In this document: one piece after another, positions 1,111 through 51,620 of the stretch
How the letters are laid out: the number at the start of each line of letters is the position of its first letter
Position numbering within the stretch: position 1 is the first letter of the stretch
From: Macrostomum lignano
Lineage: Eukaryota
Direction of reading: 5' to 3'
Length of the DNA stretch: 64,000 nucleotides
Assembly (NCBI GenBank): GCA_002269645.1
Contig: NIVC01000064.1
Coordinates: forward strand, 372,001-436,000
Notes under the pieces: model-generated
Told to the model about the DNA's origin: nothing
The model's input: the letters and a program-made list of their open reading frames with translations, nothing else
Database searches by the model: none
Translations under genes and position numbers: made by a program

Positions 1111-1984
1111 ACTCTGCGTCCTTACAAATAGTTACCTGCTAATCCTATTTTAAGTGAGCTTATTAAATGGATTTTGGTTTCAGCTGAATTTAGACGGCAT
1201 TGCTTAAGATAAACTTTTTATTGATTAATTCTGCTGAAGGTAAAAATTTGTTAACCGGTAAATAATTGCTGACACCTTCCCAATTATTGTTAGTTTCCTA
1301 ATCAGATATTACGACACAAAAGTTACATCGGCTGTACATACCACAGCAGCAGGTAGGCTTCGGCTAACTTCGGTTGTTCGGGATAGTGTGCTAAATAAAA
1401 TCTATTTGAAATTTCAAATATAACAATTTACTGCTATATTTTAGATTGCCAAACTCGTTTCACTCGTTGAACCAAACTCTATCCCTCTTATCAGTTCACT
1501 CCTCGCTCTTTGCTTAAAGTCAAAGTCCAGTTTGTTATATGTTGCAGTTCAGAACTCTTAGATTGTACAGTAATTACTTGCAGTCCGCATGTCTCTCCCA
1601 GAGACTGTAAATAAATGTACATAGATTTCTATTGTATAAAATAATGTACATTTACCACTGACACAAACGCGCTGAACTCTATTACGCATTTAAAATTTAT
1701 GCGCGAGTTTAATGGTGGCCCGTTTGTTGTAATGATTGAGAACTACGAAAAATATGTAGCCCTAAAAAAGTTGTTTTTTAAAATAAAAGAACCTAAATTG
1801 GCAAGTGCACTAGTTAAAATTTGCAGGAAATGCCTGAATGTATCATACGAGTATTTACAGTATCGGCAAAATAGAAAAATGCAAGTAGCTGCAATTCTCG
1901 ATACTTAATAAGTATGAGCCTCGCCAAGCAGCACCAAGGGCGCCTTGCCCCTGGTGCTAAGATGCCTAAGATCCTAAGATGCCA

Positions 1985-19801: not shown

Positions 19802-20792
19802 CAGGGACTACTCAAACATCGGGACGGGAAACTAGGCAAATCATGGCGAAGTTTTTACGAGGCTGGTTAAATCTATGGCCGCGCCAATGCAGCAGTAGCT
19901 ATTTCAATATTTCAATAAATCTTCAATAAATTTTATATTTTATTACGAGTATATCTGTGAGTTTTAAGATTCAGGTGCTTTTATGAACTGTGTATATTTA
20001 CTTGAAAGTGCACTGGAAAAATAGTTCATAAAACATATAAGGTAACATTGAGGGCTATTTGTAAGGGGTGAATAGTGAACATGGAACAGATGAACAATAA
20101 AAAGTTAACTCACACAGTGGATGTGAGCATTAAAATATGTGAAGTTTGAACATATATATATACACAGACGAGAAAATGAACAAATGCGAAAAAATATTTA
20201 ACAAATTTAAGCATTGAATAGTCGGGAATTTTCAGTAGATGTGAACTTGTCTGGTCCACAATATCACGCACTTCTAAGTTTTTTTGTCTTTCTCTCTTGA
20301 ACGGTGACGGATGATGGAGCCACCTTCGATGATCTCCGGACAAGTCCCTTAAAGAACGTGTTTGTTGCTTATAGTAAATAGCGCCTACCTCTAGGATGTT
20401 CGGCAGGGCCTTTTTCCATCGCTCTCGCTCAACCGAGTCCTTCGAAAACAGATGGACTTTCGTAGCCAATCGTTCGGACTCGTAATTTGACTTGCAGCCA
20501 ACAACGCTGCACTTTCTTGGCATTGATGCCAACAACACAAGCAGAAAAATTGAGCTTGTCCTGCGCGTCTACCAGAAACTTAGCTGCTATAATATAATGC
20601 AAGCATCCCCTGCTAGACTGCAGTGGAAATAACGGTATCACAAGCTTCAAATAATAGAAAATAACCATAGACAACAAAGTATCGCTCTATACAAATAAGC
20701 CAGCCAGCCTCGTCAGCTGCTAACAAACCAGCCTCGTAGAAACTTCGCCATGATTTGCCTAGTTTCCCGTCCCGATGTTTGAGTAGTCCCTG
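19802..20792 (-). mobile_element. Non-autonomous P-superfamily-like DNA transposon (991 bp) with a THAP-domain remnant
   Basis: 67-bp TIRs (19802-19868 and 20726-20792, 1 mismatch) starting CAGGG; perfect 8-bp TSD AGTGGCTC (19794-19801, 20793-20800). Internal ATG at 20523 gives MPRKCSVVGCKSNY...HLFSKD..ERERWKKALPN, the THAP N-terminal half lacking the distal C-x2-H. Confidence 0.85.
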
Positions 20793-22330
20793 AGTGGCTC
20801 CCGGGATCTTTAAGAGTGGCTCCTGGGATCTTTGAGAGTGGCTCCTGGGATCTTTAGTGGCTCCTGCGATCTTTAAGAGTGGCTCCTGGGATCTTTAGTG
20901 GCTCCTGCGATCTTTAAGAGTGGCTCCTGGGATCTTTAAGAGTGGCTCCTGGGATCTTTGAGAGTGGCTCCTGGGATCTTTGAGAGTGGCTCCTGGGATC
21001 TTTGAGAGTGGCTCCTGGGATCTTTGAGAGTGGCTCCTTGGATCTTTGAGAGTGGCTCCTGGGATCTTTAGTGGCTCCTGCGATCTTTAAGAGTGGCTCG
21101 TGGGATCTTTGAGAGTGGCTCCTGGGATCTTTGAGAGTGGCTCCTGGGATCTTTGAGAGTGGCTCCTGGGATCTTTGAGAGTGGCTCCTGGGATCTTTGA
21201 GAGTGGCTCCTGGGATCTTTGAGAGTGGCTCCTGGGATCTTTAAGAGTGGCTCCTGGGATCTTTGAGAGTGGCTCCTGGGATCTTTAAGAGTGGCTCCTG
21301 GGATCTTTGAGAGTGGCTCCTGGGATCTTTAGTGGCTCCTGGGATCTTTAAGAGTGGCTCCTGCGATCTTTAGTGGCTCCTGGGATCTTTGAGAGTGGCT
21401 CCTGGGATCTTTGAGAGTGGCTCCTGGGATCTTTAGTGGCTCCTGCGATCTTTAGTGGCTCCTGGGATCTTTAAGAGTGGCTCCTGGGATCTTTAGTGGC
21501 TCCTGGGATCTTTGAGAGTGGCTCCTGGGATCTTTAGTGGCTCCTGGGATCTTTGAGAGTGGCTCCTGGGATCTTTAGTGGCTCCTGGGATCTTTGAGAG
21601 TGGCTCCTGGGATCTTTGAGAGTGGCTCCTGGGATCTTTAGTGGCTCCTGCGATCTTTAGTGGCTCCTGGGATCTTTGAGAGTGGCTCCTGGGATCTTTA
21701 AGAGTGGCTCCTGGGATCTTTGAGAGTGGCTCCTGGGATCTTTAGTGGCTCCTGGGATCTTTAGTGGCTCCTTGGATCTTTAAGAGTGGCTCCTTGGATC
21801 TTTAAGAGTGGCTCCTGGGATCTTTAAGAGTGGCTCCTGGGATCTTTAAGAGTGGCTCCTTGGATCTTTAAGAGTGGCTCCTGGGATCTTTGAGAGTGGC
21901 TCCTGGGATCTTTGAGAGTGGCTCCTGGGATCTTTAAGAGTGGCTCCTTGGATCTTTAAGAGTGGCTCCTTGGATCTTTGAGAGTGGCTCCTGGGATCTT
22001 TGAGAGTGGCTCCTTGGATCTTTGAGAGTGGCTCCTGGGATCTTTGAGAGTGGCTCCTGGGATCTTTAAGAGTGGCTCCTTGGATCTTTGAGAGTGGCTC
22101 CTTGGATCTTTGAGAGTGGCTCCTGGGATCTTTAAGAGTGGCTCCTTGGATCTTTGAGAGTGGCTCCTTGGATCTTTAAGAGTGGCTCCTTGGATCTTTG
22201 AGAGTGGCTCCTTGGATCTTTGAGAGTGGCTCGTTGGATCTTTGAGAGTGGCTCCTGGGATCTTTGAGAGTGGCTCCCGGGTACTTTAAGAGTGGCTCCT
22301 GGGATCTTTGAGAGTGGCGCCTGGGATCAT
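20793..22330. repeat. Minisatellite, 22-nt unit GAGAGTGGCTCCTGGGATCTTT with 19-nt variants
   Basis: About 70 tandem units; the P-like element sits within the first units. Confidence 0.97.
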
Positions 22331-22894
22331 TTGGATCGTTTGCTTTGACACCTTGGAAATATTCAATAAGCGACTGTCAAAGATCTGTCATATAATATAC
22401 ATTATATATTAGTTCGCAATATCACGTGTACATATACAGTGCACATACACGTAATCCTGATATCCTAAGCCGACAAAATCTATTAAACATTGCCATCCAA
22501 CCCAATATAGCTAAAGTAGTGTTTGCGGTAATTTCTTCAGTCCGCAAGCTAGTAATGCCTTTAGACTATACTCCATGCTCATACGCCTATCCAGCTTGAG
22601 ATCGTGTGTTTGTTCTCCACGTTTTCATGTGTGCTGTAAGGAAGGGAGGGCAGTCTTCGGGGCTTTCGGCGACTGCAGACGCGGGAGTCCTGACTCTGTG
22701 GATTTTTAGGCTAGAAAAGAGGCTGCGGGGAGAGAAGTCGCTTCAGGTCTGATGGGAAAATTTCCATGTGGCGCTGGGATCTAAAAATCATGGGGCCGGG
22801 TTTGCTTTTATTTCTTTCTCCCTGCCCGAGTTCAGCTCCTCGGGCCAACGGCTGCCTCCATTGCTTGAGATTCCGGAAATGTCCAATGCCTGTA

Positions 22895-39780: not shown

Positions 39781-42729
39781 ATGGCAAAGGCTCCCGCTAT
39801 TGGCATTGATCTCGGCACTACCTACTCCTGCGTCGGTGTCTTTCAGCATGGCAAAGTGGAAATCATTGCCAACGACCAAGGAAATCGCACAACGCCGAGC
39901 TATGTTGCATTTACTGACACAGAACGTCTTATTGGCGATTCTGCAAAAAATCAAGTCGCATTAAACCCATCAAACACAGTCTTTGGTAAGCAGTTTAATA
40001 TTGTCTGTGATTAGGCCTACTGATTAATCTTAACTTTTTTCAGTAGAGATAATTAAAGTTTAACCAGGCTATTTCTAGAACTACATCTATATAAGTTAAT
40101 TGTAATATAACTATCTTTATAAACCTAATTTTATTAAGTAGGCCTATTTAATTTACTAGGTCTAACCTATTGTAGTAATGTATTGAATAAAATTCATAAA
40201 GCATACCTTATCAGGCTATTGTATGCCTTAAACTTAAAGTCTTAACTTTAATGCCCATATAACAATAGACCCAACTTAATAAATTATATTCTATTTTAAA
40301 TTATTTTTTAATTTTTTATTAAAAATCAATAGAATGTCTAACTGCAAAAATTATAATAAAGCTAGGGGCCTATTTTAATTTTTCCTCAACTTTTTTTTTG
40401 TAGTGATCAAAATTATATGGTTACATTATATAAAAACAATAATATTGATCCATTTTCTTTTTTGTCATTTCACATTTTTAATGCATATTTCATATTTCTT
40501 TTTCCTAATTCACAGATGCCAAGCGACTCATTGGGCGCAAGTTTGATGATTCTGTAGTACAACAAGACATGAAGCATTGGCCTTTCACTGTCATCAATGA
40601 TGCTGGCAGGCCTAAGATTCAAGTTGAGTACAAAGGTGAAACTAAGACCTTCTTTGCTGAGGAGATTTCTTCCATGGTCTTGACAAAGATGAAGGAGACT
40701 GCAGAGGCATACCTGGGAAAGACCGTCACTGATGCTGTTGTCACTGTGCCTGCCTACTTCAATGATAGTCAGCGTCAAGCCACCAAGGATGCTGGTGCCA
40801 TTGCTGGCCTAAATGTGCTGCGCATCATCAACGAGCCCACAGCTGCTGCCATTGCATATGGTCTAGACAAGAAGAGTGGCCACGAGAGGAATGTGCTCAT
40901 CTTTGACCTGGGTGGTGGCACCTTCGATGTGTCCATCCTGACAATCGAGGAGGGAATCTTCGAGGTGAAGTCGACTGCTGGAGACACCCATCTGGGCGGT
41001 GAGGACTTTGACAACAGGATGGTGAACCATTTCATCCAGGAGTTCAAGCGCAAGTACAAGAAGGACATGAGTGACAACAAGCGCGCTGTGAGGCGTCTGC
41101 GCACTGCCTGCGAGAGGGCCAAGCGAACTCTGAGCAGCGCCGCCCAGGCCAACATCGAGATTGACAGCCTATACGAGGGTATCGACTTCTACACGAGCAT
41201 CACCAGGGCTCGCTTCGAGGAGCTCAACGCCGACCTGTTCCGCGGCACCCTCGAGCCAGTCGAGAAGTCGCTGCGTGACGCCAAGCTCGACAAGGCGTCC
41301 ATCAACGAGATTGTGCTGGTGGGCGGCTCGACTCGAATCCCGAAGATCCAGAAGCTGCTGCAGGTGAGCAACTTGAAGTTCTTCAAGTTCTTTCTTAAAC
41401 TTCCTAAAAATTAAAGCTTGAGTAGTTAATTTAGCTGTTCTGCGAACTCAGATGATGATATTCTGTAAGGTATTCGCGGTTTCGACAGACGGACCTGCAG
41501 TGGGTTCTCTGATGCCCAAGACCTTCCTTAGTCTGATGCTGAGATTCGCACCTGCAGTAGGATTACTTATTTGCTTATTGTTAGTGTAGGCTAAAGCACT
41601 GGCCAGCCAGAGCTCTCTCAGATGATGATATTCTGTAAGGTATTCGCGGTTTCGACAGACGGACCTGCAGTGGGTTCTCTGATGCCCAAGACCTTCCTTA
41701 GTCTGATGCTGAGGCTGGCCCATCGGGGAGCTCAGAACAAAGCAAAGCAGTCCATCTGTAATCCCCATCGCCATCCCCACCCGACCCGCCATCTCGCAGG
41801 ACTTCTTCAGCGGCAAGGAGCTCAACAAGTCGATCAACCCGGACGAGGCCGTCGCCTACGGCGCCGCCGTCCAGGCCGCCATTCTGCACGGCGACAAGTC
41901 CGAGGCGGTGCAGGACCTCCTGCTGCTGGACGTGACGCCACTGTCCCTCGGCATCGAGACCGCTGGCGGCGTGATGACGGCCCTCATCAAGCGGAACACC
42001 ACCATCCCCACCAAGCAGACGCAGACGTTCACCACCTACTCGGACAACCAGCCTGGCGTTCTAATCCAGGTGTACGAAGGCGAGCGCGCCATGACCAAGG
42101 ACAACAACCTGCTGGGCAAGTTCGAGCTGTCCGGCATCCCGCCGGCTCCGCGCGGAGTCCCCCAGATCGAGGTGACCTTCGACATCGACTCCAACGGCAT
42201 TCTCAACGTGTCCGCCGTGGAGAAGAGCACCAACAAGGAGAACAAGATCACCATCACCAACGACAAGGGCCGTCTCAGCAAGGAGGACATCGAGCGGATG
42301 GTCAACGAGGCCGAGCGCTACAAGGCCGAGGACGACAAGCAGAAGGAGCGCGTCTCGGCCAAGAACTCGCTCGAGAGCTACGCCTTCTCCATGCGCCAGA
42401 CTGTCGAGGACGAGAAGCTCAAGGACAAGATCTCCGAGGACGACAAGAAGACCATCCTGGACAAGTGCAACGACGTCATCAAGTGGCTCGACGCCAACCA
42501 GACCGCCGAGAAGGACGAATACGACCATCAGCAGAAGGAGCTCGAGAAGGTGTGCAACCCCATCATCACCAAGCTGTACCAGGCCGCTGGCGGAGCCGGT
42601 GGAATGCCCGGTAGCATGCCTGGCGGCTTCCCCGGTGGCGCTCCTGGTGCTGGCGCTGCTGGCGGCCAGAGCGGCGGCGGCGGTGGCAGCGGTGGCGGCT
42701 CCGGCCCCACCATCGAGGAGGTCGACTAA
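39781..42729 (+). CDS. HSPA8 (hsc70): Cytosolic Hsc70 copy A, 660 aa; exons 39781-39985, 40516-41363, 41800-42729
   Basis: [24 protein letters not shown] and [14 protein letters not shown] signatures, GGMP-like repeats and C-terminal GPTIEEVD; exons of 205+848+930 nt with GT-AG introns in phase. Confidence 0.98.
41452..41536 (+). ncRNA. U14 (SNORD14): U14 box C/D snoRNA, copy 1 (Hsc70-A intron 2)
   Basis: Box C ATGATGA, domain A ATTCGCGGTTTC (antisense to 18S GAAACCGCGAAT), domain B CCTTCCTTAG, box D CTGA, and flanking stem GCGAACTCAG/CTGAGATTCGC. U14 is known to be hosted in hsc70 introns. Confidence 0.9.
41622..41706 (+). ncRNA. U14 (SNORD14): U14 box C/D snoRNA, copy 2 (Hsc70-A intron 2)
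   Basis: 85-nt body identical to copy 1, offset by 170 nt, with its own external stem GGCCAGC/GCTGGCC. Confidence 0.9.
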
Positions 42730-43679
42730 AAATAGTGTGAAATCTGACTGGAACATCAATTATCAGTGAAGAGTTCTGTTTGTCAGCTTTGACCCTGGCT
42801 TGTACCTGGATTATAATACTTCCCCGAGCTGAAACATTCGCTACATGCGACTTGTCTAATTAATGATCATAAATGACGGTGTACTTTTATTGCTGCTACT
42901 CCATCTCCTTGTTCGCCATCACATCCCAGTCTTGTTGATGTCAGAATTTTTGTTCTGAGGAGGATTAATAATTCAATAATCAACAAGTTTTCTAATATTA
43001 ATAACTAATAGTACCAATAATAATAATATAATCTGTTATTTTCGTCATCAAACGTAAGATTTCCTCCCACTATGTCATATAGTCTCACTTCTGTCGATTA
43101 TTAAAACCGCTGTGTGTCATTTTTGGCTTCAGTAGTGAGGTTTTTTGTCAGCCTTGTTTTTCTTTCAGCCCTTTTGACTCAAACCAATTGTTTTTTTGTC
43201 CGGGGTTGCATCGCCTTGACCTGCTCCAGTTTTCTACAAACAATTACTTAGCATACCGCATAAGTAAGCATTTCGTCTTCATTTTAAACCGAAAAAATAT
43301 ACAGTTTGGTTCATTTATTTCCAGGCGTTCTCGCGGCGCTAGGCCTATGCTTTTCTAGGCCTTATATTCGGTTTTTCAATTATTCAGTTTCAAAAATATC
43401 TTCGGTTTTGGATTATTTTTACTTGGTTAAAGAACGTCGACTGGTTCAGTATGTGGTACAGTATTTATTACTGTATTACCGACTCATACATGCGCAACCT
43501 TGGGAATCACTATGCCGTTTCTATTGGCAACACATGCAAGTCGCTATTGGCTGAGAGCAGTCACGTGACTACCGCATGATTACCGTACACTTCAATCCTT
43601 TCCCTTAAAAGACTGCCCAATACTAACATTTTCTATGGTATATTTCCAATTACTATTGAAAATACTACCAAATAGTACT

Positions 43680-44190: not shown

Positions 44191-45816
44191 TGAGAGCTAC
44201 TTATAAATTTGAAATAGGAAATATTAATCATTGGCCTGGCAATCTTTTATGGGAAAAAGGATTTAATAGTGTACATGTACAGTAATAAATGGGAAAATGG
44301 GCAATTTATTCCCATATATTGGTCTGTCACTTGAAAAAACGTTTAAAAAAAGACAAGACCAATTTAACATGAAAAATCGATTAATGATTCGTTAGAGCAG
44401 CATGTGAGGCACAAAATAGTGTGATTAGAACTTTCTCTGACACTGTTAAGAGACCCAATCACTGTTTTAGTTTTGAAAATCGTGAAATTTCCTATCTCAG
44501 TAGCGTTTTCCGGTGAAACCTGCCTTAAAAACTATTTCTGAACGAAAAGTTTTATGAATATTGATAGTGCAATAAGAAAGGCACAGCATATCCAAAAGAT
44601 GAACACTGGATCTGCCTCCTATCAAAAGCAATAGCAATTTTTGTGCTGAAAAAATTAAAACCTACTTTCTCTGTAAGTGTATAATTTTCGGCGAAAAGTT
44701 GCCTTCAAAACTGCATTTACCATAGATATCGAGTATAGCGTCCTTCTTACTTAAATTGTCCTTGGTAATATTTAGTGTAGCTAGCAATCGATTTCAGTTA
44801 AGCTTCCTAATTTTGTAAAGCTACATGGAAATCCATTTAATCCTGTCTGTCTTTTCTTACATGTACATTTTGCAACCTTTGCACCGACTTAATTGGCGCA
44901 TATGTCATTTACAAGTACATCTACAGTGTACATTTAAATATACTTTATATGTACATGTATCTGCCGAGAGTTTACTTAACAGACCACGCAGACATGGACA
45001 GAGACAATTATAATGCATGCAAAGTACATGGACATGTACATGTATACGCTTCTATAGTGTTGCATTTAGCTTATCGAAGTAGCGATTACATTGTACTTAT
45101 GACTCTTAATATTGTTTGTGCAGTATTCCTCGGCACAGGAGACCACTTGAACTATTTAAAATTACCGGTGTCTGCATTTGGTACATGTACACACATTAGT
45201 TTAGAAAGCTCCATATAGCATTTTTATTATGGAGACCAACCATGGTTCTGAGAAACTATGGGAAATGGGCTTGACTTTTCATTAACTGCAACTTTACACG
45301 TTGCTTGCTCGTATCAATAAAGATGAATAAACTACGAAAATAAAGCAGTCTTAATGGACCTGTAGTTGTATGAATTAATGCATTAATGCGTAAGTTAGTA
45401 TCGCATATTTACTATGGGAGTACGAGCTACCTAGGAAAATATCAATTACGGGCTGCATGTACATTTTAGAGCCCGTGACGCAAAATCTCTAGTTCTATTA
45501 GACTTATTTCCAAAATGATGGACTTTAAATGTACGTTTTTTATCAAACATACTGTGTGTAGTACAAATATTTCCAGGAAATACCGATGTCTTTAGTGAAG
45601 TCGTCGTTCGTTTGTGGCTAAGCTGCTGTGAGTTAACGTAAGGACAGAAATATTTAACTTCCGCGCTAGGTTTCTCTGGTAATTTTCATTTCATGACAAC
45701 TAAAGGTAAAAAACAAATTAGTACATTGTAACTACCAGAATTAACTGATTTTTCAATAACCTGAGAAACTTTAGAAATAGTGTCTGGTAGTTTTTATAAA
45801 AGACAAGCTGTTAATA

Positions 45817-46129
45817 CCTGGAGGAAAGAATAGAATGGAGTGCTAATCTGAGCCAGTTATTTTTATCTCGCTCGATCTTAACTTTTAACATCCCTTTCCC
45901 CCCCCCCGTTCTTTCCTATTGGCTCGTGACTGCCATAGACAAAGTATTTTCGTCTCGTTTTCGCTTTCGTTCCCCTCTGATAGGTCTGTCCCAGCATAGT
46001 ATGAGCTCGCATCAAAATATGCTTTCAGCCCATGGAAGGAACGGGGGAAAGGGATGTTAAAAGCGAAAATCGAGCGAGATAAAAATAACTGGCTCAGATT
46101 AGCACTCCATTCTATTCTTTCCTCCATGG
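45817..46129. mobile_element. Foldback MITE, possibly piggyBac-like (TTAA-CC ends)
   Basis: Perfect 58-bp inverted arms at 45819-45876 and 46069-46126, continuing imperfectly inward for about 40 bp. TTAA at 46130-46133 abuts the right end; TTAA at 45811-45814 is 2 nt from the left end. Confidence 0.65.
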
Positions 46130-46369
46130 TTAAAACCCGCGGATTTTGAACCCGGGGAATTCCAATCCCCGAAACTATTTTTGCATATATTGAGATTAAA
46201 CTCAAACAAAAACTTTTATTAGTTGGGACAGAGTTAAACATAAAATAGAGTACATTAATTCGTTTAAAATTAGGATTTGAGGCAAACATTGATATTGTTG
46301 GCTGGAGTGCTGCGCAGAATGTCAGGAAAACACTGGCCTCTACCTCTGCCTCTCCCTATGTCCATTGCA

Positions 46370-47820
<1,451 letters not shown>

Positions 47821-48998
47821 TAACAGTCTATTCCTTTCCACTCGCATCTGGCCCACAGCCATGAGCTGGATTCTTTATCTGGCCTTTGAGGTTAAAGTCT
47901 GCCAATCCTTGCTTCGAAAGCCAGTTTGTGGGACGTAGTAGTCTCATGGTTGTTATCATTTCTCATGCTTTAATCACGTCATCTTTCTGGCCAATTAGCA
48001 GCCCTGAGAGGAGTTTGTGTATCTCCAGCTCCACCGCAGTTTGCAGCAGTCTAACAACCAAGGAAATATGCATTCTTGAGTAAAGGAGGCAATTTAAATT
48101 TTAAGGTACCTTTATGTGAAATTTAATGTTAAAATTTTCATGGTGTAACTAATTTAGTAGGATTTCATTGTAATCGGTTATTCATTAACTTTTCACTTAT
48201 TTTTACATACCATCCCGCATCGCCTTGATTTGCAGTGCCATCGGCATCCACTGTTAAACTGCTGCAGACTGTCTATACAGTGGTTTGAATGTCTCACTAA
48301 ACTGTAATAGCTAAACGTAGCCTCTTATAGCCTTCTCTGTGCCCCCACGCGTAAGTTATTCCAAAACATTGTACACTCGCTATGTACACTGAGCCCTTGA
48401 AGACGATTGATAAAAGTGGAGCGGCGCTATGGGGCATTTAGTGAAAAAATCGCACATTTTGAGCAGTTTTTTTGCACTTTTAGGTAGGAAAGACTCAAAT
48501 TTAGGAGGTTTAAGATAGGTAGATAGCCTATGACACTTTCCGTAGTGAATTTAGGGTGGTTGCAAAATTTGGTGTTAATTGGTTGAGCGGTTTGGGAGTC
48601 TATAGCGAAGTAATTTGTACACAGACACACAGAGTTTTGATTTTTTATATGTAGAGATTAACATGTTTACAATAAAAACAAAAACCAACAACTTAAATAA
48701 AATATTTTTGGTATGTAATAAGTTGACTTTTAAGTTCGAACTGGATAATTTTGTATTTTAGTATTAAGCTTACAGGCCAGATGGAAGAGGCAGAGTAAAA
48801 AAACTGCTGTAAATTGGCATATTTAAAAAAAAACCAGACACCTGCAAAGGTCGATCGCATCGATGAAATTCGATCTAACAGCCAGCATGGTAACTGACAC
48901 TCTGGCACACGCAACCACTCTACTCTTACTTATAAGGTTTAATTATTAAAAACGGACTGTCACAAAAGCCACCAAAGCAGCACTTTCGTTCAGAAACT

Positions 48999-51620
48999 TT
49001 AGTCGACCTCCTCGATGGTGGGGCCGGAGCCGCCACCGCTGCCACCGCCGCCGCCGCTCTGGCCGCCAGCAGCGCCAGCACCAGGAGCGCCACCGGGGAA
49101 GCCGCCAGGCATGCTACCGGGCATTCCACCGGCTCCGCCAGCGGCCTGGTACAGCTTGGTGATGATGGGGTTGCACACCTTCTCGAGCTCCTTCTGCTGA
49201 TGGTCGTATTCGTCCTTCTCGGCGGTCTGGTTGGCGTCGAGCCACTTGATGACGTCGTTGCACTTGTCCAGGATGGTCTTCTTGTCGTCCTCGGAGATCT
49301 TGTCCTTGAGCTTCTCGTCCTCGACAGTCTGGCGCATGGAGAAGGCGTAGCTCTCGAGCGAGTTCTTGGCCGAGACGCGCTCCTTCTGCTTGTCGTCCTC
49401 GGCCTTGTAGCGCTCGGCCTCGTTGACCATCCGCTCGATGTCCTCCTTGCTGAGACGGCCCTTGTCGTTGGTGATGGTGATCTTGTTCTCCTTGTTGGTG
49501 CTCTTCTCCACGGCGGACACGTTGAGAATGCCGTTGGAGTCGATGTCGAAGGTCACCTCGATCTGGGGGACTCCGCGCGGAGCCGGCGGGATGCCGGACA
49601 GCTCGAACTTGCCCAGCAGGTTGTTGTCCTTGGTCATGGCGCGCTCGCCTTCGTACACCTGGATTAGAACGCCAGGCTGGTTGTCCGAGTAGGTGGTGAA
49701 CGTCTGCGTCTGCTTGGTGGGATGGTGGTGTTCCGCTTGATGAGGGCCGTCATCACGCCGCCAGCGGTCTCGATGCCGAGCGACAGTGGCGTCACGTCCA
49801 GCAGCAGGAGGTCCTGCACCGCCTCGGACTTGTCGCCGTGCAGAATGGCGGCCTGGACGGCGGCGCCGTAGGCGACGGCCTCGTCCGGGTTGATCGACTT
49901 GTTGAGCTCCTTGCCGCTGAAGAAGTCCTGCGAGATGGCGGGTCGGGTGGGGATGGCGATGGGGATTACAGATGGACTGCTTTGCTTTGTTCTGAGCTCC
50001 CCGATGGGCCAGCCTCAGCATCAGACTAAGGAAGGTCTTGGGCATCAGAGAACCCACTGCAGGTCCGTCTGTCGAAACCGCGAATACCTTACAGAATATC
50101 ATCATCTGAGAGAGCTCTGGCTGGCCAGTGCTTTAGCCTACACTAACAATAAGCAAATAAGTAATCCTACTGCAGGTGCGAATCTCAGCATCAGACTAAG
50201 GAAGGTCTTGGGCATCAGAGAACCCACTGCAGGTCCGTCTGTCGAAACCGCGAATACCTTACAGAATATCATCATCTGAGTTCGCAGAACAGCTAAATTA
50301 ACTACTCAAGCTTTAATTTTTAGGAAGTTTAAGAAAGAACTTGAAGAACTTCAAGTCGCTCACCTGCAGCAGCTTCTGGATCTTCGGGATTCGAGTCGAG
50401 CCGCCCACCAGCACAATCTCGTTGATGGACGCCTTGTCGAGCTTGGCGTCACGCAGCGACTTCTCGACTGGCTCGAGGGTGCCGCGGAACAGGTCGGCGT
50501 TGAGCTCCTCGAAGCGAGCCCTGGTGATGCTCGTGTAGAAGTCGATACCCTCGTATAGGCTGTCAATCTCGATGTTGGCCTGGGCGGCGCTGCTCAGAGT
50601 TCGCTTGGCCCTCTCGCAGGCAGTGCGCAGACGCCTCACAGCGCGCTTGTTGTCACTCATGTCCTTCTTGTACTTGCGCTTGAACTCCTGGATGAAATGG
50701 TTCACCATCCTGTTGTCAAAGTCCTCACCGCCCAGATGGGTGTCTCCAGCAGTCGACTTCACCTCGAAGATTCCCTCCTCGATTGTCAGGATGGACACAT
50801 CGAAGGTGCCACCACCCAGGTCAAAGATGAGCACATTCCTCTCGTGGCCACTCTTCTTGTCTAGACCATATGCAATGGCAGCAGCTGTGGGCTCGTTGAT
50901 GATGCGCAGCACATTTAGGCCAGCAATGGCACCAGCATCCTTGGTGGCTTGACGCTGACTATCATTGAAGTAGGCAGGCACAGTGACAACAGCATCAGTG
51001 ACGGTCTTTCCCAGGTATGCCTCTGCAGTCTCCTTCATCTTTGTCAAGACCATAGAAGAGATCTCTTCAGCAAAGAAGCTTTTAGTCTCACCCTTAAACT
51101 CAACTTGAATTTTTGGCCGAGTGCCATCATTGACAACAGTGAAGGGCCAATGCTTCATGTCTTGTTGTACTACAGAATCATCAAACTTGCGCCCAATGAG
51201 TCGCTTTGCATCTGTAAGTGAATTAATTAATATGCCTAGTAAAATATCAACTTTTAAATTTGCAAAACTAAAGCTAGGCTAGGCCTTATAACGGCAATTG
51301 TAAAGAATAGCATGCCTCAGGATTTATAAGCACTAGGGCCTATATAGGACATTAGACATGTTATAAACTTTTGGGACTGTGGATTTATAATAAAATTTGA
51401 AAGAATATGACTTACCAAACACAGTATTGGAAGGATTTAGCGCCACCTGATTTTTAGCCGAATCACCGATGAGCCTTTCGGTATCGGTAAATGCAACATA
51501 GCTGGGAGTGGTTCGGTTGCCCTGATCGTTGGCAATAATTTCAACCTTACCGTGCTGGAAGACACCAACACACGAGTAGGTTGTACCCAGATCAATACCA
51601 ATTGCAGGAGTTTTAGACAT
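48999..51620 (-). CDS. HSPA8 (hsc70): Cytosolic Hsc70 copy B; exons 51620-51416, 51211-50364, 49927-48999; 1-nt deletion frameshift at 49719-49721
   Basis: Same exon structure as copy A (205+848 nt), but exon 3 is 929 nt rather than 930 (CCC instead of CCCC in the ATC-CCC-ACC region). It is either a pseudogenised copy or a homopolymer error. Confidence 0.9.
50021..50105 (-). ncRNA. U14 (SNORD14): U14 snoRNA, second copy in Hsc70-B intron 2
   Basis: Reverse complement of 41622-41706. Confidence 0.9.
50191..50275 (-). ncRNA. U14 (SNORD14): U14 snoRNA, first copy in Hsc70-B intron 2
   Basis: Reverse complement of 41452-41536. Confidence 0.9.

What the first reader, a model, noticed from the sequence alone, without database searches (positions are those of the whole stretch)
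41452..41706. Tandem U14 snoRNAs whose methylation guide appears shifted by 3 nt
Canonical U14 ends CCTTCCTTGGATGT-CTGA and guides 18S Cm414 (yeast)/Cm462 (human) by the D+5 rule. All four copies here end CCTTCCTTAGT-CTGA, lacking ATG, so the fifth base upstream of box D (T at 41528) would pair with the second A of 18S CUAAGG, the A417 equivalent. This predicts a relocated or lost modification while processing domain A is retained. Both antisense elements also predict host 18S variants (GAAACCGCGAAU, CUAAGGAAGG). Two copies share one intron at Q351/D352, a position different from the vertebrate U14 host introns.
Basis: partly seen in the sequence, partly recalled or inferred. Interest (0 to 1): 0.7.

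Follow-up and report, generated by a model that had tools for sequence, protein, structure and literature searches.

The report
Flatworm U14 snoRNA with shortened guide
An intron of a flatworm (Macrostomum lignano) heat-shock-cognate gene carries tandem copies of the U14 small nucleolar RNA whose methylation guide has lost 3 bases next to box D, so it can no longer point at the usual ribosomal RNA cytosine; this is a real lineage-specific variant of a well-known RNA, not a new kind of element.

Summary
Four identical 97-nt box C/D units sit in the window: 41447-41543 and 41617-41713 (+), 50184-50280 and 50014-50110 (-). Each pair lies in the phase-0 intron after Q351 of one of two inverted hsc70 genes. 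The host is Macrostomum lignano.

They are diverged U14 orthologues. They have box C, a 12-nt domain A identical to a snail U14, a 10-nt core of domain B, box D, and the same host gene as snail, fish and mammal U14. They fail the Rfam threshold (19.7-24.2 bits against 64).

All 17 copies at the three hsc70 loci of the assembly read CCUUCCUUAGU-CUGA, with 3 nt between CCUUCCUU and CUGA. All 111 environmental U14s that have a CUGA there keep 6 or 7 nt, as do the snail copies.

By the D+5 rule the guide points at the second A of CUAAGG, 3 nt downstream of the canonical C. I could not decide between relocation and loss, and could not retrieve the host 18S.

Verdict: new variant of a known kind, moderate interest.

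The parts
41447..41543 (+). U14-like box C/D snoRNA, copy A1 (97-nt unit CTCAG...CTGAG)
   Evidence: Exact direct repeat; weak RF00016 match at 41447-41540, 19.7 bits, E=2.4
41617..41713 (+). U14-like snoRNA, copy A2, identical to A1; its 3' end lies 86 nt upstream of the 3' splice site
50184..50280 (-). U14-like snoRNA, copy B1, in the inverted second hsc70 gene
   Evidence: Identical to A1
50014..50110 (-). U14-like snoRNA, copy B2
   Evidence: Identical to A1
41452..41458 (+). Box C, AUGAUGA (copy A1)
   Evidence: Matches the RUGAUGA consensus. Aligned to box C of RF00016. One paralogous copy has GUGAUGA, which still fits R.
41472..41483 (+). Domain A, AUUCGCGGUUUC (18S-processing antisense element)
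   Evidence: Identical to domain A of both Biomphalaria U14s. On proxy 18S the complement GAAACCGCGAAT is 12 Watson-Crick pairs at nt 82-93, inside a 14-pair run that includes 2 G-U pairs.
41486..41489 (+). D'-like box, CAGA
   Evidence: Read from the sequence; the same CAGA/UAGA follows domain A in the snail U14s
41510..41515 (+). C'-like box, UGAUGC
   Evidence: Read from the sequence
41522..41531 (+). Remnant of domain B, CCUUCCUUAG (10 nt)
   Evidence: 10 consecutive Watson-Crick pairs with CUAAGGAAGG of proxy 18S, at positions 2-11 from box D; duplex -16.1 kcal/mol against -23.0 for a hypothetical full-length guide
41533..41536 (+). Box D, CUGA (D1), only 3 nt after CCUUCCUU instead of 6
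   Evidence: Rfam aligns this CUGA to box D with a 3-nt gap. It is intact in 17 of 17 copies.
41539..41543 (+). 3' half of the terminal stem, CUGAG; contains a second CUGA (D2, 41539-41542)
   Evidence: Pairs with CUCAG at 41447-41451. It is mutated to CGAAG in one paralogous copy.
41364..41799 (+). Host intron 2 of hsc70 gene A (436 nt, phase 0, after Q351)
   Evidence: GT..AG boundaries and exon mapping
49928..50363 (-). Host intron 2 of hsc70 gene B (436 nt)
39781..42729 (+). hsc70 gene A: coding exons 39781-39985, 40516-41363 and 41800-42729
   Evidence: tblastn with P0011 plus splice sites; Macrostomum lignano hsc70
48999..51620 (-). hsc70 gene B, inverted tail-to-tail copy; 98.96% identical to gene A over exon 2 to exon 3

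Best explanation
These are genuine, multi-copy, intron-encoded U14 (SNORD14) orthologues of the flatworm Macrostomum lignano. They are presumably processed from intron 2 of paralogous hsc70 genes.

Shown: box C, D', C' and D; a 12-nt domain A; a 10-nt core of domain B; a terminal stem with copy-specific outer stems; and a conserved host gene.

Inferred: domain A still performs the conserved U14 job of base-pairing to the 5' region of 18S during pre-rRNA processing.

A 3-nt loss (AUG) between the domain B core and box D leaves CCUUCCUUAG-U-CUGA. The G that normally sits 5 nt from box D, opposite the canonical C (yeast C414, human C462), now sits 2 nt from it. This U14 therefore cannot direct the canonical Cm; I put that at about 0.85.

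A perfect 10-bp duplex covers positions 2-11 from a consensus box D. The snoRNP must assemble for the domain A function in any case. The most likely outcome is therefore fibrillarin methylating the nucleotide paired to position 5, the second A of CUAAGG (yeast A417 equivalent). I put that at about 0.5.
For: Identity as U14.
- RF00016 is the match found at this element, aligned end to end over the model with a 3-nt gap in domain B.
- Domain A is identical to that of two bona fide snail U14s, which score 74 and 66 bits and lie in hsc70 introns.
- A fish hsc70 gene carries three U14s at 74-76 bits.
- U14 in hsc70 introns of mammals is documented in PMC7277114.

Constraint on the sequence.
- There are 17 copies at three loci of assembly GCA_002269645.1.
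- Box C core, domain A, domain B and box D1 are invariant in all 17.
- The only changes are in the stem and D2, an R-to-R change in box C, and one base after D'.
- The intron flanks carry substitutions and indels.

The shift.
- All 111 environmental U14s with a CUGA there have 6 nt (109) or 7 nt (2) between CCUUCCUU and CUGA; none has 3.
- A targeted metagenome scan for the short form found nothing.

The target.
- On two complete proxy rDNA units, the only target paired by 10 uninterrupted Watson-Crick pairs is the canonical U14 site, with D+5 on the second A of CUAAGG.

Choice of D1 over D2.
- The Rfam alignment places box D at D1.
- D1 is preceded by U, as in canonical U14.
- The copy with D2 destroyed (CGAA) keeps D1, and the A-to-G change in box C fits RUGAUGA but would break the alternative register.
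Against: - There are no RNA data, so expression, RNA ends and methylation are all untested.
- The host 18S was not retrievable, so pairing was tested only on proxy 18S genes of unknown eukaryotes.
- The terminal stem is offset from box D1 by 2-3 nt. The canonical geometry gives only 2 bp here, whereas 51 of 84 canonical U14s have a stem of 4 bp or more directly abutting box D. The K-turn is therefore non-standard, and fibrillarin placement could be affected.
- A 10-bp guide is at the short end of functional guides.
- Identity among copies may reflect gene conversion rather than selection.
- The Rfam score is far below the gathering threshold.
- Canonical U14 genes, or a separate guide for the C, may exist elsewhere in the roughly 760-Mb genome (size from my own knowledge).
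Confidence: 0.5

Rival explanations
1. Domain B is a methylation-dead remnant. The U14 works only through domain A, possibly with some helper pairing from the 10-nt remnant. The canonical Cm is either made by an unrelated box C/D snoRNA elsewhere in the genome or lost, as proposed for Drosophila U14.
For: [quoted passage not shown] The terminal stem and box D geometry is non-canonical. The duplex is weakened to -16.1 kcal/mol from about -23.
Against: The 10-nt remnant is still a perfect complement, including the A that fits a U-variant 18S, and is invariant in 17 of 17 copies. A consensus box D directly adjoins it. Such a configuration normally directs methylation (established D+5 rule). No alternative guide for the C lies in the 64-kb window, though that is a weak test.
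Confidence: 0.3
2. The functional box D is the second CUGA (41539-41542), paired with a box C register shifted 3 nt upstream (CAGAUGA). The guide then carries a 4-nt bulge (UCUG) and D+5 falls outside the duplex, so domain B guides nothing.
For: This register gives a 3-nt bulge plus a C-G closing pair that continues into the GCGAA/UUCGC outer stem in copy 1. The GAUGAUGAU and CUGAUGCUGA repeats allow the slip.
Against: Box C would be CAGAUGA rather than the perfect AUGAUGA. Rfam aligns D1 as box D. One copy has D2 mutated to CGAA with D1 intact. Another has A-to-G at the base that would be the sheared A in this register but is the permissive R in the standard one. Only 1-2 bp abut D2 in copy 2.
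Confidence: 0.1
3. The host 18S carries a compensating change, such as a 3-nt deletion giving ACUAAGGAAGG, so the guide is not really shifted relative to its target.
For: None found. It is only formally possible because the host 18S could not be read.
Against: The segment was recovered as an exact 30-mer from contaminant eukaryotic sequence in 38 stretches of genome contigs; two of these (L141, L150) were confirmed as 18S by Rfam. From my own knowledge, it corresponds to one of the most conserved stretches of small-subunit rRNA.
Confidence: 0.03
4. The units are decaying, non-expressed U14 pseudogenes amplified as a 170-bp intronic tandem repeat, and functional U14 genes lie elsewhere.
For: Copy number varies from 2 to 4 per intron among loci. 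Two kinds of stem-disrupting variants exist. One copy's spacer has a transposon-like insertion.
Against: All functional boxes and both antisense elements are intact in 17 of 17 copies, while the flanks vary. The last copy lies 86 nt from the 3' splice site, a typical position for intronic snoRNAs (my own knowledge). Each copy has its own flanking outer stem. The host gene is the conserved U14 host.
Confidence: 0.05

Closest known systems
Canonical U14 / SNORD14 (Rfam RF00016), e.g. vertebrate hsc70-intron U14 and the Biomphalaria glabrata copies found here
   Same: Box C/D architecture; domain A (12 of 12 identical to the snail); core of domain B; location in hsc70 introns; box D preceded by U
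   Different: 3 nt (AUG) are missing between the domain B core and box D. The terminal stem is displaced 2-3 nt from box D, and a second CUGA is present. Two to four copies share one intron. The Rfam score is 20-24 bits against a gathering score of 64.
Drosophila U14 (Yuan et al. 2003, as summarised in PMC6315972)
   Same: U14 that keeps domain A but no longer guides the canonical 18S Cm
   Different: In fly, domain B is reported absent. Here a perfect 10-nt complement persists next to box D, so a new target 3 nt away is predicted rather than simple loss.
Tetrahymena U14-like snoRNAs TtnuCD25 and TtnuCD32 (PMC6315972)
   Same: A domain A-like element without a canonical domain B
   Different: Neither their domain B nor the rRNA target is conserved. 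The flatworm RNA is far closer to canonical U14.
Yeast U14 (snR128)
   Same: Dual-function snoRNA whose processing (domain A) and methylation (domain B) functions are separable
   Different: The yeast RNA has the Y domain, a full domain B guiding Cm414, and is not intronic (PMC7277114 and my own knowledge).

Membership tests
U14 / SNORD14 (RF00016) | Score at or above the Rfam gathering threshold (64 bits) | tested here: not met
   19.7 bits (window) and 24.2 bits (L001); nothing at gathering in the window. Snail and fish U14s score 66-76 bits with the same tool.
U14 / SNORD14 (RF00016) | Box C (RUGAUGA) near the 5' end and box D (CUGA) near the 3' end | tested here: met
   AUGAUGA at 41452-41458 and CUGA at 41533-41536; invariant or consensus-preserving in 17 copies
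U14 / SNORD14 (RF00016) | Domain A: about 13-nt complementarity to the 5' region of 18S (GAAACYGCGAAUG) | tested here: met
   AUUCGCGGUUUC is identical to the snail U14. It forms 12 Watson-Crick pairs, or a 14-pair run with 2 G-U, on proxy 18S nt 82-93. The host 18S itself was not available.
U14 / SNORD14 (RF00016) | Domain B: about 14-nt guide abutting box D that places the canonical C (yeast C414, human C462) opposite position 5 | tested here: not met
   Only 10 nt remain. The spacing from CCUUCCUU to CUGA is 3 nt instead of 6. The canonical C pairs with position 2 and position 5 pairs with an A.
U14 / SNORD14 (RF00016) | Terminal stem directly abutting boxes C and D | tested here: inconclusive
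   A 5-bp stem CUCAG/CUGAG exists but is offset by 2-3 nt. The canonical register gives 2 bp here, against 4 bp or more in 51 of 84 canonical U14s.
U14 / SNORD14 (RF00016) | In animals: encoded in introns of the hsc70/HSPA8 gene | tested here: met
   Intron 2 of M. lignano hsc70. The same host gene holds U14 in snail, fish, two environmental metazoan contigs and mammals (PMC7277114).
U14 / SNORD14 (RF00016) | Expressed, nucleolar, fibrillarin-associated RNA required for 18S processing | not testable with these tools
   No RNA or functional data were accessible
Box C/D methylation guide for a new site (A417 equivalent) | At least 10 uninterrupted pairs spanning position 5 upstream of a consensus box D | tested here: met
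   10 Watson-Crick pairs at positions 2-11 on proxy 18S carrying CAUCUAAGGAAGG. If the host has CAUCCAAGG, only 8 pairs form and the energy is -12.3 kcal/mol.
Box C/D methylation guide for a new site (A417 equivalent) | 2'-O-methyl actually present at the predicted nucleotide | not testable with these tools
   Needs RiboMeth-seq or primer extension

The most novel reading that the evidence does not exclude
Box D of U14 has effectively slid 3 nt towards the guide, while the distance from guide to terminal stem stayed at 10 nt. This would create a new Am in one of the most conserved segments of 18S. The ancient Cm would be abandoned with no back-up guide. It would be a natural case of a methylation site moving by a micro-deletion next to box D, in a snoRNA that cannot be lost because of its processing role.
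Probability: 0.25. Interest if true: 0.55.

Novelty: new variant of a known kind. Interest (0 to 1): 0.4.

Why it matters
U14 is one of the few essential, universally conserved snoRNAs, and its Cm site is conserved from yeast to human.

A U14 that keeps its processing domain but has its guide re-registered by 3 nt would show how rRNA methylation sites can move or disappear while the carrier RNA stays under selection. M. lignano is a tractable laboratory flatworm, so the prediction can be tested directly with one RiboMeth-seq experiment.

The data also show that the U14-hsc70 host relationship extends across bilaterians (fish, snail, flatworm), although the intron used differs between lineages.

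The impact is limited because domain B is dispensable in yeast (my own knowledge) and is already reported lost in flies.

Tried and rejected
1. Rfam at gathering thresholds on the whole window gave no hits. Only the permissive mode recovers U14.
2. Other flatworm and spiralian hsc70 loci gave no comparison. Paragonimus is intronless, and Schistosoma mattheei and Helobdella have no U14. A lizard hsp70 paralogue has none either. The deletion therefore could not be dated within flatworms.
3. A metagenome scan for the shortened form with domain A found 0 hits.
4. I tried a spurious ORF that starts at box C (MMIFCKVF...) as a handle to find the same element in related species through the protein database. 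No candidates were found.
5. The host 18S could not be reached, because no tool reads unannotated eukaryotic DNA without a protein anchor. I considered searching for spurious rDNA-encoded ORFs. I dropped this as unlikely to single out M. lignano and not worth a full database scan. Two contaminant eukaryotic rDNA units in prokaryote genome bins served as proxies instead.
6. TRF does not report the two-copy repeat; the repeat finder does.
7. A k-mer search of the window for another guide against the canonical C found none.
8. Chance resemblance is rejected by 4 exact copies against 0 expected, correctly ordered boxes and antisense elements, and the host gene.
9. The original papers of Yuan et al. 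2003 and Liu and Maxwell 1990 are not held. The fly precedent is cited second-hand. The mammalian intron numbers (5, 6, 8) are from my own knowledge.
Full report
**Where the window comes from.**
- The coding sequence around the finding is an hsc70/HSPA8-type gene. Its spliced translation is 100% identical, over the exon 2-3 query, to a Macrostomum lignano protein (P0011).
- The window matches contig NIVC01000064.1 of assembly GCA_002269645.1 exactly (L167).
- Gene A has three coding exons: 39781-39985, 40516-41363 and 41800-42729.
- A second copy lies tail-to-tail on the minus strand. It is 98.96% identical from exon 2 through exon 3 (40512-42730 against 51215-48998).

**The observation.**
- Intron 2 of gene A is 41364-41799: 436 nt, GT..AG, phase 0, between Q351 and D352.
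- It holds two 100% identical 97-nt units at 41447-41543 and 41617-41713.
- The same two units lie in gene B at 50184-50280 and 50014-50110.
- The diagnostic 17-mer occurs 4 times against 0 expected.

**Anatomy of one unit (copy A1).**

| Coordinates | Sequence | Role |
|---|---|---|
| 41447-41451 | CUCAG | 5' half of terminal stem |
| 41452-41458 | AUGAUGA | box C |
| 41472-41483 | AUUCGCGGUUUC | domain A |
| 41486-41489 | CAGA | D'-like box |
| 41510-41515 | UGAUGC | C'-like box |
| 41522-41531 | CCUUCCUUAG | domain B core |
| 41532 | U | |
| 41533-41536 | CUGA | box D (D1) |
| 41537-41538 | UG | spacer |
| 41539-41543 | CUGAG | 3' half of terminal stem; contains a second CUGA (D2) |

- Copy 1 extends the stem with GCGAA/UUCGC. 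Copy 2 has an outer GGCCAGCC/GGCUGGCC stem.
- The last copy ends 86 nt before the 3' splice site.

**Is it U14?**
- Rfam finds nothing at gathering score.
- In permissive mode, RF00016 (SNORD14) is the match at this element. It spans the full model at 19.7-24.2 bits, with a 3-nt gap exactly in domain B.
- The independent evidence is stronger. The Biomphalaria glabrata hsc70 gene carries two bona fide U14s (74.2 and 66.3 bits). Their domain A is identical to the flatworm's, and their domain B is canonical: CCUUCCUUGGAUGU-CUGA.
- A cyprinid fish hsc70 gene carries three U14s at 74-76 bits.
- Two environmental metazoan contigs have U14 in hsc70 introns.
- U14 in mammalian hsc70 introns is classical (PMC7277114).
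- I therefore regard orthology with U14 as about 0.9 likely, although the curated score threshold is not met.

**How unusual is the 3' end?**
- A metagenome scan for domain A followed by CCUUCCUU returned 151 matches.
- In 111 of them a CUGA follows CCUUCCUU closely, so I take these as real U14s. 109 have exactly 6 nt between CCUUCCUU and CUGA: GGAUGU 89, GGAAGU 10, AGAUGC 4, AGAUGU 2, and two singletons. Two have 7 nt.
- A targeted scan for the 3-nt form found nothing.
- Within M. lignano, all 17 copies at the three hsc70 loci of the assembly carry the short form. The counts are 4 (NIVC01000064, the window), 7 (NIVC01002591) and 6 (NIVC01000065). No canonical copy lies at these loci.
- The intron flanks differ by substitutions and indels. 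The 17 copies vary only as follows:
  - stem position 2, U to A, in three copies;
  - the 3' stem/D2, CUGAG to CGAAG, in one copy;
  - the R of box C, A to G, in one copy;
  - one base after D', in one copy.

**Which CUGA is box D?**
- In 51 of 84 canonical U14s, a stem of 4 bp or more abuts box D directly. In the flatworm that register gives only 2 bp, and the 5-bp stem starts 2-3 nt later.
- The distance from CCUUCCUU to the stem is still 10 nt, as in canonical U14. Box D thus looks as if it has moved 3 nt towards the guide.
- An alternative K-turn register (box C = CAGAUGA with D2) is conceivable. I favour D1 for four reasons:
  - box C is then a perfect consensus;
  - D1 is preceded by U, as in canonical U14;
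  - Rfam aligns D1 as box D;
  - the two informative paralogue variants (D2 destroyed; A to G at the R position) are neutral for the D1 register and damaging for the D2 register.
- This rests on single variants and is suggestive only.

**Target prediction.**
- I could not obtain the host 18S.
- As proxies I used two complete eukaryotic rDNA units found as contaminants in prokaryote genome bins. They carry both predicted variants, GUGAAACCGCGAAUGGCUC and CCACAUCUAAGGAAGGCAGC.
- On these, domain A pairs at nt 82-93.
- The D1 guide's only target with 10 uninterrupted Watson-Crick pairs is the canonical U14 site, at positions 2-11. The canonical C sits opposite position 2, and the second A of CUAAGG sits opposite position 5.
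- Duplex energy is -16.1 kcal/mol. A hypothetical undeleted guide gives -23.0. If the host has C instead of U, the energy is -12.3.
Under either box D assignment, this U14 cannot direct the canonical Cm.

**Mechanism and likelihoods.**
- Shown: the sequence anatomy, its fixation in 17 copies, and its uniqueness among U14s sampled.
- Inferred: expression, domain A function, and snoRNP assembly on C/D1.
- U14 is essential where it has been tested, and every copy at these loci has this form. The RNP presumably assembles, and a perfect 10-bp duplex next to box D would then normally be methylated at D+5.
- I put relocation to the A at about 0.5, a methylation-dead remnant at about 0.3, the D2 register at about 0.1, and the remaining readings (pseudogenes, a compensating change in the host 18S) below 0.1 together.

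**Comparison with what is known.**
- Functional independence of domains A and B is published. So are the absence of domain B in Drosophila U14, with another snoRNA predicted to take over the site, and domain-B-less U14-like RNAs in Tetrahymena (PMC6315972).
- The flatworm case is therefore a new variant of a known kind. What is new is that the guide is not lost but re-registered by 3 nt.

**Intron position.** Residue numbers are those of the M. lignano protein P0011.

| Organism | U14-bearing hsc70 introns, after residue | Source |
|---|---|---|
| Fish (Anabarilius grahami) | 68, 137, 188 | |
| Snail (Biomphalaria glabrata) | 137, 441 | |
| Environmental metazoans | 373, 441 | |
| M. lignano | 351 | |

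- Position 351 is not used as an intron in any of the other genes examined.
- U14 clearly moves among hsc70 introns in evolution, so a different intron is not surprising in itself.

**Verdict.** The functional prediction is reasonable but unproven, and the novelty is moderate.

Noticed in passing
window 49715-49725 (- strand), against 42000-42010 in gene A: hsc70 gene B has one C fewer in a C-run (ATCCCACC against ATCCCCACC). This shifts the frame after about residue 420. NCBI models this gene as a 438-aa product. It is either a long-read homopolymer error or a recent pseudogene.
   Followed up: partly
L001 7604-8364 and 13407-14294; L168 around 10.6-11.1 kb and 16.1-16.6 kb: The number of U14 units per intron differs among the three homeologous or allelic hsc70 loci of M. 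lignano: 2+2, 4+3 and 3+3. The units form a 170-bp tandem array (97-nt snoRNA plus 73-nt spacer).
   Followed up: yes
L001, minus-strand hsc70 gene, spacer between the first and second U14 copies (between about 13.7 and 14.05 kb): A roughly 297-bp insertion with terminal inverted repeats (CATACATGCGCAAC...GTTGCGCATGTATG) interrupts one spacer. It looks like a MITE-type transposon.
   Followed up: no
window 20792-22333: Minisatellite of period 22 nt with 72 copies at 91% match; consensus GAGTGGCTCCTGGGATCTTTGA.
   Followed up: partly
window 46277-47823: Long CT-rich, low-complexity tract between the two inverted hsc70 genes; it translates as runs of SLSLSL. A short inverted repeat (45816-45902 against 46043-46130, 95%) lies near the centre of the gene pair.
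   Followed up: no
L004 2572-2668 and 4026-4126 (Biomphalaria glabrata hsc70): Two canonical U14 genes lie in snail hsc70 introns, after residues 137 and 441. This shows that the U14-hsc70 host association predates the split between protostomes and deuterostomes.
   Followed up: yes
L099 around 1730-1830 (- strand), environmental metazoan hsc70 contig: A U14 in the intron after residue 373 has box D written CCGA instead of CUGA.
   Followed up: no
L003 11254-11331 (-), Schistosoma mattheei hsp70 locus: A mir-3492 precursor match at 63.5 bits (gathering 44) lies inside the annotated gene range. Two weak hammerhead type I matches (E about 2) also lie in the same locus.
   Followed up: no
window 42738-42794 (-): A weak match to the nematode C/D snoRNA ceN114 (18.7 bits, E=5.5) lies just downstream of the hsc70 stop codon. 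It lacks a convincing box C and is probably chance.
   Followed up: no
window 40512 and 51215: The near-identity (98.96%) between the two inverted genes starts at the beginning of exon 2. Exon 1 and intron 1 are much more diverged: exon 1 is 88.6% and 97.1% identical to P0011 in the two genes. This suggests gene conversion limited to the exon 2, U14 intron and exon 3 block.
   Followed up: partly
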